From: Auanema rhodensis
Taxonomy: Eukaryota > Animalia > Nematoda
DNA: 64,000 nt
Direction of reading: 5' to 3'
NCBI GenBank assembly: GCA_964057225.1
Contig: OZ059900.1
Coordinates: forward strand, 11,532,001 to 11,596,000
Shown: positions 16,260-19,526 of the stretch, piece by piece
Layout: each line of letters starts with the position of its first letter
Position numbering within the stretch: position 1 is the stretch's first letter
Translations under genes and position numbers: made by a program
Notes under the pieces: generated by a model
What the model was told of the DNA's origin: nothing
The model's database searches: none
Seen by the model: the letters and a program-made list of their open reading frames with translations, nothing else

Positions 16260-16377
16260 TCTCACCGCCGTAGACCTGTTAACGGCTAGCTTACTCGACG
16301 CTATTTGCTACACCTCTACGCGGTGTGGGATGAAAACTAATAACCGGCTGGTAACCAGTTATTAGGCTAAGTAGCAA
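16259..16377 (+). ncRNA. HDV-like self-cleaving ribozyme (candidate)
   Basis: Nested double-pseudoknot order: P1 (T)TCTCAC 16259-65 / GTGGGAT 16325-31; P2 TTGCTAC 16305-11 / GTAGCAA 16371-77; P3 ACC/GGT around L3 TCTACGC; P4 CTAATAAC 16337-44 / GTTATTAG 16358-65; J4/2 GCTAA with putative catalytic C16367. P1.1 is weak and G1 is absent. Confidence 0.82.
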
Positions 16378-16384
16378 TAAATCC

Positions 16385-17111
16385 GGCCCTTGCTGGAACG
16401 AATAAGAAACTTTAAGAAATTGACGGTTAGCGTGGGGTGGCGGAATGGTGTGAACCATTTTACTGCCAAGCAGAACTGAAGGTGAGGGTCGCGGGTTTAA
16501 CCAAACCCCTCACCAATCGAGGAACCTAAGCTAGCGGTCAACACTCAGTAAACAGTCTTTTTACGGCGGGGCATCGCTGTTGAAAGATAGTGGATGTGTG
16601 TGGACCTAAGGCGATGGCAACTCGTGGTAAGAAGATCTCACTGGGCGAAGAGCCATGCCCGGCTACAGAAACCAGCGAGCATCTACCTACCGCAATAAAT
16701 CCAGGCCCTTGCTGGAACGAATATGAAACTTAAGAAATTGACGGATAAGGTGGGGCAGTGGAATGGTATAAATCATTCCACTGTGAAGCAGAACTGAGTA
16801 CTCCAGGCCCTTGCTGGAACAAATACGAGACTTTAAGAAATTGACGGTTAATGTGGGGTGGCGGAATGGTGTGAATCATTTTACTGCCAAGCAGAACTGA
16901 AGGTGAGGGTTGCAGGTTTAACCGAATCTCTCACCAATTGAGGAACCTAAGCTAGCGGTCAACACTCAGTAAGCAGTCTTTTTACGGCGGGGCATCGCTG
17001 TTGAAAGATAGTGGATGTGTGCGGACCTAAGGCGATGGTAACTCGTGGTAGGAAGATCTCACTGGGCGAAGAGCCATGCCCGGCTAAAGAAACCAGCGAG
17101 CATCTACCTAC
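16385..17111 (+). repeat. 306-bp direct repeat (16385-16690, 16806-17111) plus a third copy of its first about 95 bp (16704-16797)
   Basis: GGCCCTTGCTGGAAC...AAGAAATTGACGG...AAGCAGAACTGA occurs three times. The two long copies are 421 bp apart and end in CATCTACCTAC. Confidence 0.95.
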
Positions 17112-17786
17112 TACATGAAACTGTACTCGATACAGGCGTAGCAAATATAATCAAATCAGCTTACAACCATGGTTGGGATACGTGGTTGTGAGCAAATAAC
17201 CTCATTATCATGGTTGGCTGGTATCGAGGTAATGAACCTGAACAAAGAAAGAGGAAAGTTGGTTTGGAAAACTGAATTCTGGTCGGGGCGTGACCGGAGG
17301 GCAGGAAGTACTACCAAGTGAAATCTGGACCTTGTTCTTGTTCATCTGAAAGTGAGTTTGTGACTTGCTTGGTGACATGGACTACGCCCCAGTTCAGATA
17401 GCCTTGCAATGATCAGAGAGGGGATCCCATATCACCCATGACTCACAAAATATTTAGCACGTAACTTATCGAAATTATAGCCTGTATGTATTACATCAGT
17501 AACACGTACAGGCACATGCAACAGGTATGACCTGATAGTCTTAATTCCATTCCTGTAAGGATATTAAGACTGTACCTGTTCCATGTAACAACAGAATTGG
17601 ACTAGTGTCATCGTGAGATGTGCCTAATCCAACTCTACCCTCGTGATCCGGAAACAGATCACTGCAAAACAGGACCTTGAGACGGGAAGACCTGACAAGA
17701 CTTAACCTCGCGCCTGAAAGAGGCTAAGTCAAAAACCCAACTCAAATATAGAGAAGCCCGGCCCCATCGTAAGATGGGTCTGGGCC

Positions 17787-18925
17787 AAATCTATTTTGCA
17801 TGATTTGGACTTGTCCTCATCATAGTCTGGAGACCTTGGTCACTAGAATTAGATTTAGGCCTGGGACCTCTGCATGCAGAGGGACCAGGCCGAATCTATT
17901 TTACACGAAATGGACTTGTCCCTTTTGTCGCTCGGTGATGTGAATCGCCAAACAACAATTAGATCACGGCCTGGACCTCTGCTTGCGGAGGATCCGGGCC
18001 GAATCTATTTTGCATGATTTGGACTTGTCCTCATCATAGTCTGGGGACCTTGGTCACTAGAATTAGATTTAGGCCTGGTACCTCTGCATGCAGAGGGACC
18101 AGGCCGAATCTATTTTACACGAAATGGACTTGTCTCTTTTGTCGCTCGGTGATGTGAATCGCCAAACAACAATTAGATCACGGCCTGGACTTCTGCTTGC
18201 AGAGGATCCGGGCCGAATCTATTTTGCATGATTTGGACTTGTCCTCATCATAGTCTGGGGACCTTGGTCACTAGAATTAGATTTAGGCCTGGTACCTCTG
18301 CATGCAGAGGGACCAGGCCGAATCTATTTTACACGAAATGGACTTGTCCCTTTTGTCGCTCGGTGATGTGAATCGCCAAACAACAATTAGATCTCGGCCT
18401 GGACTTCTGCTTGCAGAGGATCCGGGCCGAATCTATTTTGCATGATTTGGACTTGTCCTCATCATAGTCTGGGGACCTTGGTCACTAGAATTAGATTTAG
18501 GCCTGGAACCTCTGCATGCAGAGGGGCCAGGCCGAATCTATTTTACACGAAATGGACTTGTCCCTTTTGTCGCTCGGTGATGTGAATCGCCAAACAACAA
18601 TTAGATCACGGCCTGGACTTCTGCTTGCAGAGGATCCGGGCCGAATCTATTTTGCATGATTTGGACTTGTCCTCATCATAGTCTGGGGACCTTGGTCACT
18701 AGAATTAGATTTAGGCCTGGAACCTCTGCATGCAGAGGGGCCAGGCCGAATCTATTTTACACGAAATGGACTTGTCCCTTTTGTCGCTCGGTGATGGGAA
18801 TCGCCAAACAACAATTAGATCACGGCCTGGACTTCTGCTTGCAGAGGATCCGGGCCGAATCTATTTTGCATGATTTGGACCTGTCCTCATCATAGTCTGG
18901 GGACCTTGGTCACTAGAATCAGAAT
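17787..18925 (+). repeat. 214-bp tandem array (5 units plus a partial one), each a dimer of related 105- and 109-bp hairpin subunits
   Basis: (G/A)AATCTATTTTGCATG starts at 17787, 18001, 18215, 18429, 18643 and 18857. The subunits share AATCTATTTT..GGACTTGTCC..AATTAGAT..GGCCTGG..GCAGAGG..GGCC. Confidence 0.97.
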
Positions 18926-19526
18926 TATCGGTTTTTGGCATTTTTAGCATTTTTGCATTTTCTCCCCTTTCCCTTTTAACTTTCTTTCCTTTCCTTTTTT
19001 CTTCCTCTCCCTTCCCCATTAAACTCTTAAACTCTCAATCAACTAAAATCCAAAAACCGCAATGGGCATACCTAGAGGTCTAGGGTCTGGAAATCCTGCT
19101 CGTAGGAAAACCGGACAACACCCACTCTCCTGACTCGGGCTTGACCCCTGTCAGTGCCTGGCGACAGCGCTCGCCGCTTCGGTTATTACACTTTTGCACC
19201 CTGCAAATCTCTCCCTTAACCGAAGGCTTCGCAAGATGCCTGAAACAAACCAACCTTGCATTTTGATGTGTTCCTTCTCAACGGTTATTACGGGCAACTG
19301 CGGTGACCCTGAGTAACACACGGTCACCTTGACAAGACTGAGCCTGAACGTGGAATTGATCCACCGGAAAAGATGGCCCGGGTAAATGGATGACGCTTAG
19401 CGTTCATCACCTTATCTGGAACCACTTACGCACTGAGTTCAGAACACCTACCGCTATCTCAGTTAAGACCAGGGTGGTTCATTGGTGAAAGTAACCCAAG
19501 CCACCGTACAGGGCTTGTAAAAAGCT

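What the first reader, a model, noticed from the sequence alone, without database searches (positions are those of the whole stretch)
16260..19526. 3.27-kb modular structured-RNA leader: candidate undescribed ncRNA system carried by the retrotransposon
Seen: 44% of the element has no credible ORF, yet most of it can be drawn as hairpins. The order is ribozyme, triplicated 18S-matching module, unique hairpin run, 214-bp hairpin array, pyrimidine tract, structured pre-AUG domain. Many G-U pairs and GNRA/CUUG loops work only on the + strand. Inference: this is a selected RNA architecture, released from the Pol I co-transcript by the ribozyme, which may serve stability, nucleolar trafficking, rRNA mimicry or cap-independent translation.
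Basis: partly seen in the sequence, partly recalled or inferred. Interest (0 to 1): 0.85.

Follow-up and report, generated by a model that had tools for sequence, protein, structure and literature searches.

The report
Long repeat-swollen leader of rDNA retrotransposon
The 3.27-kb non-coding stretch is the 5' leader of a nematode R4-type retrotransposon sitting in a 28S rRNA gene: it starts with a good self-cleaving ribozyme and is hairpin-rich, but over half of it is recent internal duplication and only one short 18S-like motif is shared with a relative.

Summary
A 7,408-bp element (16260-23667, 12-bp target duplication) interrupts one 28S gene. Its first 3,267 bases have no ORF of 80 aa or more. 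They contain, in order: an HDV-like ribozyme, a duplicated or triplicated module, a unique hairpin run, a 214-bp array of 5.4 copies, a pyrimidine tract and a pre-AUG region.

Most of the leader folds better than shuffled controls. However, the array and the unique run fold equally well on both strands. 58% of the leader is repeats of 94-98% identity. No Rfam family reaches its threshold. Leaders of eight related elements share no sequence with it except one 21-23-nt motif identical to 18S rRNA, which recurs in a Heligmosomoides relative. Relatives' leaders and ORFs are equally "structured".

The best reading is a lineage-specific, duplication-inflated 5' UTR of an R4-type element. The ribozyme frees it from the Pol I transcript. 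With 52 upstream AUGs, the ORF probably needs internal initiation. A selected ncRNA architecture is neither shown nor excluded, because no second copy or ortholog could be found. Plus-strand-specific signals are modest and lie mainly in 16260-17120.

The parts
16248..16259 (+). Left copy of the 12-bp 28S target-site duplication
   Evidence: Identical to 23668-23679. Both match positions 9681-9692 of the intact unit.
16260..16377 (+). HDV-like self-cleaving ribozyme. P1 16260-16265/16325-16330; J1/2 16266-16304; P2 16305-16311/16371-16377; P3 16312-16314/16322-16324; L3 16315-16321; P4 about 16336-16365; candidate catalytic C at 16367. Predicted cleavage is 5' of 16260, exactly at the 28S junction.
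   Evidence: Rfam HDV-F-prausnitzii 21.5 bits (gathering score 44) and drz-agam-1 13.4 bits cover the core. My descriptor found it at the junction here and in L002, L005 and L006. Literature reports R4/Dong ribozymes that cleave at the element's 5' end (PMC3774820).
16381..17120 (+). Duplicated block: D2a 16381-16699 and D2b 16802-17120 (94% identical), with an extra roughly 100-nt module copy at 16700-16801. Each module holds a small hairpin, an unpaired 18S-identical motif (16406-16426, 16724-16745, 16827-16847) and a long hairpin rich in G-U pairs.
   Evidence: Repeats. 18S match. Plus-strand-specific folding.
17121..17781 (.). Unique hairpin-rich run. It folds equally well on both strands.
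   Evidence: z -6.4 (+) and -5.8 (-). Windows 17460-17684 give z about -5 on both strands.
17782..18927 (.). Tandem array with a 214-bp period and 5.4 copies. It is built from alternating 110-nt (A) and 104-nt (B) sub-units about 71% alike, and each sub-unit begins with a roughly 40-nt near-palindrome.
   Evidence: TRF 98% matches. Inverted repeats. Unit boundaries. z -4 to -8 on both strands.
18928..19035 (+). Pyrimidine-rich low-complexity tract (52% T, 31% C) with no ATG and no fold signal.
19036..19526 (+). Pre-AUG region. It is weakly structured, holds six upstream ATGs, and shows no second ribozyme.
   Evidence: z -2.4/-1.3. uATGs. Rfam and descriptor scans negative.
19527..23354 (+). 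Uninterrupted 1275-aa ORF: Myb-like N-terminal motif, reverse transcriptase, then a C-terminal Cys/His knuckle and a restriction-like endonuclease motif. No AP-endonuclease domain.
   Evidence: Pfam RVT_1 8.9e-23. PDB hits to R2 and LINE-1 ORF2 reverse transcriptases at about 1e-17. Nematode homologs at 33-43% identity. Motifs read in the translation.
23355..23667 (+). 3' UTR of the element.
   Evidence: Lies between the stop codon and the right 28S junction. No similarity to the leader.
23668..23679 (+). Right copy of the 12-bp target-site duplication.

Best explanation
The region is the 5' untranslated leader of an intact, site-specific non-LTR retrotransposon of the R4/R2 (restriction-like endonuclease) group, inserted in one 28S gene of a nematode-type rDNA array.

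Shown:
- The element's limits and its target duplication.
- The single ORF.
- An HDV-like ribozyme fold whose P1 begins at the first base of the element.
- A leader that is 58% internal repeats: a 319-bp block present twice plus a third module copy, and a 214-bp unit repeated 5.4 times.

Inferred:
- The element is read through by RNA polymerase I as part of the pre-rRNA, and the ribozyme cuts at the 28S junction, leaving an uncapped RNA.
- With 52 upstream AUGs, the ORF at 19527 cannot be reached by scanning. It must be translated by internal initiation or from a shorter transcript.
- The leader reached kilobase size through 5' extension and repeated tandem duplication in the element's lineage. 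It is tolerated and carried along; it was not built as a device.
- Its hairpin richness is the general plus-strand structuredness seen across this family's RNAs, plus DNA-level palindromes in the array.
- The one piece with comparative support for function is the unpaired 18S-identical motif in the modules.
For: - Junctions and target duplication. Relatives L002, L005, L006, L007, L008 and L010 have the same 28S site.
- Ribozyme. P1 and P2 differ in sequence but pair in the window, L002, L005, L006 and L007. L005 scores 39.8 and 35.9 bits on Rfam. R4 and Dong precedent: PMC3774820.
- No coding remnant in the leader.
- Repeat content.
- Long non-coding 5' segments are usual in the family: about 1-1.6 kb in L002, 3.9 kb in L005, 2.0 kb in L007, 2.5 kb in L008, at least 3.3 kb in L009. 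All are unrelated in sequence.
- z-scores of relatives' 5' segments are -2.1 to -3.1, and of their ORFs -2.5 to -3.8. The window leader without the array is -2.3.
- The array and the unique run are strand-symmetric.
- uAUG count is at chance: 52 against 53.6 expected.
- A model of 5' extension of R2 elements is published (PMC3774820).
Against: - The block 16260-17120 shows plus-strand-specific folding at neutral G+T content.
- All six transitions at paired positions of the module hairpin keep the plus-strand pair. That hairpin was itself predicted on the plus strand, so the count is biased.
- Stable tetraloops occur only on the plus strand.
- The D2a/D2b duplicates differ by 6% inside an element whose ORF is intact, so the duplicated leader has been propagated for some time.
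- The 18S motif is kept in two elements whose proteins are only about 33% identical.

These points fit some RNA-level selection on parts of the leader.
Confidence: 0.6

Rival explanations
1. One reading: the whole leader is a selected, modular plus-strand RNA (ribozyme, rRNA-mimic modules, hairpin array, pre-AUG platform) serving stability, nucleolar retention or cap-independent translation.
For: - Folding is well beyond shuffles.
- Plus-strand asymmetry in 16260-17120.
- Special tetraloops only on the plus strand.
- The 18S-identical motif is predicted unpaired between hairpins and recurs in L009, where it is part of a 273-nt stretch matching an SSU rRNA model at E about 1e-9.
- An uncapped RNA with 52 uAUGs needs some internal-entry device.
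Against: - No sequence conservation of any other module in eight relatives.
- The closest relative's 274 nt upstream of its ORF is unrelated (L001).
- The array and the unique run are strand-symmetric.
- 58% of the leader is young repeats.
- The pre-AUG region is only weakly structured (z -2.4).
- There are no Rfam hits.
- The relatives' coding regions are as structured as the leaders.
Confidence: 0.2
2. A DNA-level function: the 214-bp tandem units act as a monomer-type internal promoter or enhancer, as in the roughly 200-bp monomer arrays of mouse LINE-1 5' UTRs (from my own knowledge). This would give a shorter capped transcript that starts in or after the array.
For: - Tandem monomers of about 200 bp lie about 600 bp upstream of the ORF, followed by a non-repeated stretch.
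- The palindromes are equally strong on both strands, as expected of DNA-level sites.
- Neighbouring units are more alike than distant ones, which fits unequal crossing-over.
- It would solve the uAUG problem for most of the leader.
Against: No promoter evidence is available with these tools. The element sits in Pol I-transcribed rDNA and keeps a junction ribozyme, which argues for co-transcription. Most relatives lack comparable arrays: only L005 has a 190-bp unit repeated 2.1 times.
Confidence: 0.12
3. An assembly artefact: the leader, or the copy number of its repeats, is a chimera or mis-collapse in a repetitive rDNA scaffold.
For: The window is a scaffold with a 200-N gap at 53204-53403. 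The rDNA units are 100% identical. Only one copy of the element is present.
Against: There is no N in the element. Both junctions are clean, with the same site and target duplication as the relatives. The ribozyme lies exactly at the junction. Repeat units carry their own variants. Relatives also have kilobase-scale 5' segments.
Confidence: 0.05

Closest known systems
R4 / Dong (R4 clade) and R2 site-specific non-LTR retrotransposons of rDNA
   Same: A single ORF with reverse transcriptase and a C-terminal Cys/His plus restriction-like endonuclease motif, with no AP endonuclease. A fixed 28S insertion site with a short target duplication, shared with nematode relatives. An HDV-like ribozyme at the 5' end cutting at the junction, as reported for R4 and Dong (PMC3774820).
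   Different: The leader between ribozyme and ORF is 3.15 kb, and 58% of it is internal repeats. The strongylid relatives place a ribozyme about 20-200 nt before the ORF. I could not fetch Ascaris R4 itself, so placement in the R4 clade rests on host group, target gene and architecture. No tree was made.
HDV-like self-cleaving ribozymes of retrotransposons (Rfam drz-agam, HDV-F-prausnitzii; R2/R4 ribozymes)
   Same: P1 of 6 bp, P2 of 7 bp, P3 of 3 bp with a 7-nt L3, a long P4, and a C three bases before the 3' strand of P2. These fit the published ranges of P1 6-7 bp, P2 at least 5 bp and a variable P4 (PMC3774820).
   Different: It scores below every Rfam gathering score (21.5 against 44). 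The J1/2 loop is 39 nt. P1.1 is weak by eye.
R2Bm 5' RNA (structured 5' RNA that directs R2 protein during second-strand cleavage)
   Same: It is a structured plus-strand RNA near the 5' end of an R2-type element with a proven role (PMC2346776). It is therefore the natural model for a functional leader domain.
   Different: [quoted passage not shown] No similarity to it was tested or seen here, and the pre-AUG region of this element is only weakly structured.
Monomer arrays in LINE-1 5' UTRs (mouse)
   Same: Tandem units of about 200 bp upstream of a non-repeated stretch and the ORF.
   Different: This element lies in Pol I-transcribed rDNA and has a junction ribozyme. Promoter activity is unknown. 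The resemblance is recalled from my own knowledge and was not tested.

Membership tests
HDV-like ribozyme | Nested double-pseudoknot helices P1 (6-7 bp), P2 (at least 5 bp), P3 and P4 in the canonical order | tested here: met
   P1 6 bp, P2 7 bp, P3 3 bp, L3 7 nt, P4 hairpin. The descriptor gives about 4.4 chance hits per 7.5 kb, yet its hit starts exactly at the junction here and in L002, L005 and L006.
HDV-like ribozyme | Score at or above a curated Rfam family threshold | tested here: not met
   Best 21.5 bits against a gathering score of 44 (HDV-F-prausnitzii), and 13.4 against 37 (drz-agam-1). The long J1/2 and P4 are penalised.
HDV-like ribozyme | Catalytic cytosine in J4/2 | tested here: met
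   C16367, three bases before the 3' strand of P2, aligned to the model's conserved C.
HDV-like ribozyme | Self-cleavage activity | not testable with these tools
   No biochemical data are available. Transcript 5'-end mapping would show it.
R4/R2-group site-specific non-LTR retrotransposon | Reverse transcriptase ORF without an AP endonuclease, with a C-terminal zinc knuckle and restriction-like endonuclease | tested here: met
   RVT_1 8.9e-23 and no PF03372. R2 protein structures hit at about 1e-16. The Cys/His knuckle and PD...E motif were read in the translation; no profile exists for the endonuclease in the libraries used.
R4/R2-group site-specific non-LTR retrotransposon | Fixed insertion site in the 28S gene shared by family members | tested here: met
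   The same junction, within 1-4 nt, in L002, L005, L006, L007, L008 and L010.
R4 clade specifically | Groups with Ascaris R4 and Dong in a reverse-transcriptase tree, and uses the same site as Ascaris R4 | not tested
   The R4 paper (PMC307436) is not held and no R4-named protein came back. That the site lies between the R2 and R1 sites is my recollection only.
Known structured ncRNA families (Rfam 15) | Any family at gathering score within 16378-19526 | tested here: not met
   None. Only sub-threshold hairpin look-alikes appear in e-value mode, and there were zero hits for 16378-17130.
SSU rRNA-derived segment (rRNA mimic) | Match to an SSU rRNA model or extended 18S similarity | tested here: not met
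   The window has only a 21-23-nt identity, present three times, and no SSU model hit. By contrast, L009:260-532 matches an SSU model at E about 1e-9.
IRES-type translation element | Internal ribosome entry near 19527 | not testable with these tools
   Only indirect evidence: the predicted RNA is uncapped and carries 52 uAUGs.

The most novel reading that the evidence does not exclude
The modules carry a deliberately kept copy of a universal 18S segment (window 18S 5984-6006). It is presented single-stranded between hairpins and repeated three times. The same 22 nt sit in the leader of a Heligmosomoides element, inside a miniature 18S 3'-domain look-alike. On this reading, R4-type elements of nematodes use rRNA mimicry to engage a partner of that 18S segment in the nucleolus or on the ribosome, and the leader is a scaffold for it.
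Probability: 0.15. Interest if true: 0.75.

Novelty: new variant of a known kind. Interest (0 to 1): 0.42.

Why it matters
If the leader is only a swollen UTR, the value is descriptive. It documents an intact R4-type element with the ribozyme 3.15 kb from its ORF. It also shows that kilobase-scale non-coding 5' segments are common in nematode relatives, some bounded by two ribozymes.

If the 18S-identical motif is functional, it would be a testable case of rRNA mimicry by an rDNA parasite. It would then bear on how uncapped Pol I-derived retrotransposon RNAs are retained, translated or packaged.

Tried and rejected
- A second copy or ortholog of the leader was not found. There was nothing elsewhere in the window. 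The window's ORF is not on record. The nearest protein is 43% identical. The metagenome protein scan and a 33-nt array pattern both gave nothing. Covariation on orthologs was therefore impossible.
- A degraded ORF1 or RT remnant in the leader: rejected.
- A composite of a non-autonomous element plus an autonomous element: no 3'-UTR-like sequence in the leader and no second ribozyme. Not supported for the window, although L005, L007 and L008 do have two ribozymes.
- Paralog covariation with RNAalifold on both strands: both strands come out 'all pairs kept', because the method chooses compatible pairs. Only the energy difference is informative.
- miRNA, snoRNA and sRNA look-alike hits: all far below threshold and treated as chance.
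- The pyrimidine tract as a splice acceptor: no nematode-type acceptor was seen by eye, and this was not pursued.
- L011 was unusable because of large N runs. L012's upstream 3.5 kb has no motif.
- R4 target-site details from the literature could not be retrieved.
- The first z-scan and one control batch timed out, so the rRNA z controls are missing. The rRNA comparison rests on energy and G-U counts.
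Full report
**Setting.** The window is a tandem rDNA array of 18S, 5.8S and 28S genes with a 6,567-bp unit. One 28S copy is interrupted. Identity to an intact unit ends at 16259 and resumes at 23668, and 12 bp are present on both sides. The element is therefore 16260-23667 (7,408 bp). The finding's span, 16260-19526, is exactly the part before the only long ORF (19527-23354, 1275 aa). The element contains no N. The window is nevertheless a scaffold, with a 200-N gap at 53204-53403.

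**What the element is.**
- The ORF has a reverse-transcriptase domain (RVT_1, 8.9e-23) and no AP-endonuclease domain.
- It hits solved R2 proteins and LINE-1 ORF2p at about 1e-17 over the RT domain.
- By eye it shows a Myb-like N-terminal motif and a C-terminal Cys/His knuckle followed by a restriction-like endonuclease motif.
- Its relatives are nematode proteins at 33-43% identity, mostly strongylids.
- I fetched twelve loci that encode relatives. L002, L005, L006, L007, L008 and L010 show the same 28S junction to within a few bases.
- This is an R4/R2-group, 28S-specific non-LTR retrotransposon. I could not fetch Ascaris R4 or its paper, so 'R4 clade' is an inference. My memory that this site lies between the R2 and R1 sites is unverified.
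- The ORF is uninterrupted, with no stops or frameshifts.

**The ribozyme.**
- Rfam aligns 16295-16379 to an HDV-like model at 21.5 bits, below the gathering score of 44.
- Reading the alignment and running a descriptor of my own gives P1 16260-16265/16325-16330, P2 16305-16311/16371-16377, P3 16312-16314/16322-16324, a 7-nt L3, a long P4, and a C at 16367 three bases before the 3' strand of P2.
- P1 starts at the first base of the element, so the predicted cut is exactly at the 28S junction.
- The descriptor is loose, at about 4.4 chance hits per 7.5 kb. It nevertheless places a hit at the junction in the window, L002, L005 and L006, with P1 and P2 different in sequence but paired in each.
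- L005 reaches 39.8 and 35.9 bits on Rfam.
- Published work reports such ribozymes at the 5' ends of R4 and Dong, cleaving at the element's 5' end. It gives P1 as 6-7 bp, P2 as at least 5 bp, and J1/2 loops up to 498 nt (PMC3774820).
- I regard this part as sound.

**The rest of the leader.**
- *No coding capacity.* No ORF reaches 80 aa. There is no translated similarity to 107 family proteins. A stop lies two codons before the ATG.
- *Repeats.* Together the repeats make 1,886 of 3,267 bases, or 58%.
  - A 319-bp block occurs twice (16381-16699 and 16802-17120, 94% identical), with a third copy of its first roughly 100 nt at 16700-16801.
  - A 214-bp unit is repeated 5.4 times (17782-18927, 98% matches). 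It is built of alternating 110- and 104-nt halves about 71% alike, and each half opens with a roughly 40-nt near-palindrome.
  - Neighbouring array units are more alike than distant ones, as unequal crossing-over or slippage would give.
- *After the array.* A pyrimidine tract follows (18928-19035) and then 491 unique bases.

**Is it more structured than chance?** Yes, for most of it. The table gives z-scores against dinucleotide shuffles.

| Segment | z, + strand | z, - strand |
|---|---|---|
| 16260-16699 | -5.7 | -4.2 |
| D2b (16802-17120) | -4.7 | -1.05 |
| Unique run (17121-17781) | -6.4 | -5.8 |
| One array unit | -7.6 | -9.2 |
| Pre-AUG (19036-19526) | -2.4 | -1.3 |
| Pyrimidine tract | about 0 | about 0 |
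| Element's own ORF (mean) | -1.3 | -0.8 |

However, the array and the unique run are as good on the minus strand, which is what DNA-level inverted repeats give.

**Strand specificity.**
- Whole-leader energy is only 7% lower on the plus strand. The difference is 23-28% for the window's own 18S and 28S.
- The exception is 16260-17120. Energy there is -225 against -189 kcal/mol at a neutral G+T of 0.50, with 33 against 20 G-U pairs.
- For the three module copies, the alignment-wide RNAalifold fold gives -23.9 against -6.3 kcal/mol. For the 319-bp pair it gives -106.9 against -76.8.
- In the module hairpin, all six transitions at paired positions keep a plus-strand pair. That helix was chosen on the plus strand, so the count is biased.
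- GNRA, UNCG and CUUG tetraloops number 23 of 37 on plus against 0 of 35 on minus. Once repeats are counted once, the figures are 5 of 15 against 0 of 13, p about 0.04.

**Comparison with relatives.**
- None of the leaders of eight related elements shares sequence with this one. Shared 11-13-mers are at chance level.
- Long non-coding 5' segments are nevertheless the rule: about 1-1.6 kb in L002, 3.9 kb in L005, 2.0 kb in L007, 2.5 kb in L008 and at least 3.3 kb in L009. Only L006's first copy has a short one.
- Their 150-nt windows have mean z of -2.1 to -3.1 on the plus strand, always a little lower than on the minus strand. The ORFs of L005 and L002 give -2.5 and -3.8.
- The window's leader without the array gives -2.3. 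Being structured is thus a property of these element RNAs in general.

**The 18S motif.**
- Each module copy holds 21-23 nt that match the window's own 18S at 5984-6006 (20/21, 22/23 and 19/21). It is predicted unpaired between two hairpins.
- Alone this is marginal: one of 200 shuffles scored as high.
- The same 18S segment, 22 of 22, lies in the upstream region of the Heligmosomoides polygyrus element (L009:285-306).
- There it is part of a 273-nt stretch (260-532) that matches an SSU rRNA covariance model at E about 1e-9. That stretch also contains the decoding-site stretch of 18S.
- Two hits on the same 22 nt in elements about 33% identical in protein are not chance.
- Six other leaders lack the motif. 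The window has no SSU-model hit and no decoding-site motif.
- I cannot tell retention by selection from repeated capture of 18S by template switching.

**How it most likely works.**
- *Shown:* the anatomy above.
- *Inferred:* Pol I read-through, ribozyme cutting at 16260, and an uncapped RNA.
- With 52 upstream ATGs, as many as chance gives, scanning to 19527 is implausible. Translation needs internal entry or a shorter transcript.
- The leader most likely grew by 5' extension, for which a model is published for R2 (PMC3774820), and by tandem duplication.
- The 6% divergence between the two 319-bp blocks, inside an element with an intact ORF, says the duplicated leader has been carried for some time. 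It is at least tolerated.

**Rivals.** Each is weighed in its own section.

**Verdict.** Novelty: a new variant of a known kind.

Consensus lines printed by the tools were not used.

Noticed in passing
L005:57-138 and 3976-4046; L008:2583-2651; L007:2145-2220: Three strongylid or metagenome relatives carry an HDV-like ribozyme just 5' of the ORF, 2-3.9 kb downstream of the 28S junction. A junction ribozyme was detected in L005 (also at L006:23457-23538) but not in L007 or L008. Where both exist, the long 5' segment would be released as an RNA separate from the ORF RNA.
   Followed up: partly
L009:260-532: The upstream region of the Heligmosomoides polygyrus element matches an SSU rRNA covariance model (44.8 and 36.9 bits, E about 1e-9). 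It has 22/22 and about 20-nt identities to universal 18S stretches and miniaturised helices, giving a mini-18S look-alike inside a retrotransposon leader. The contig starts inside this region, so the 5' junction is unseen.
   Followed up: partly
window 53204-53403: A run of 200 N (scaffold gap) replaces the 18S 3' end, ITS1, 5.8S, ITS2 and the 28S start of one rDNA unit. The 18S before it also has small differences from the other copies (99.7%). The window is therefore an assembled scaffold, and its repeat counts deserve caution.
   Followed up: yes
L007:2435-5962 and 6219-9890: Two full-length RT ORFs, 35% and 34% identical to the window's, lie in tandem between a single pair of 28S flanks, with no 28S sequence detected between them.
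   Followed up: no
L005:1021-1420 and L009:837-1494: Small, possibly spliced open reading frames (lysine- and glutamate-rich in L005; a 125-aa gene call in L009) lie inside the long 5' segments of two relatives. No counterpart exists in the window's leader.
   Followed up: no
L010:1270-2470: The intergenic spacer of the JGI metagenome rDNA carries a roughly 67-nt-period hairpin array that draws dozens of sub-threshold miRNA-model hits. This is a reminder that hairpin arrays near rDNA attract such look-alike matches.
   Followed up: no
window 10763-10953 (and each unit): Each rDNA spacer holds a 92-nt direct repeat pair (88% identical) just after the 28S gene.
   Followed up: no
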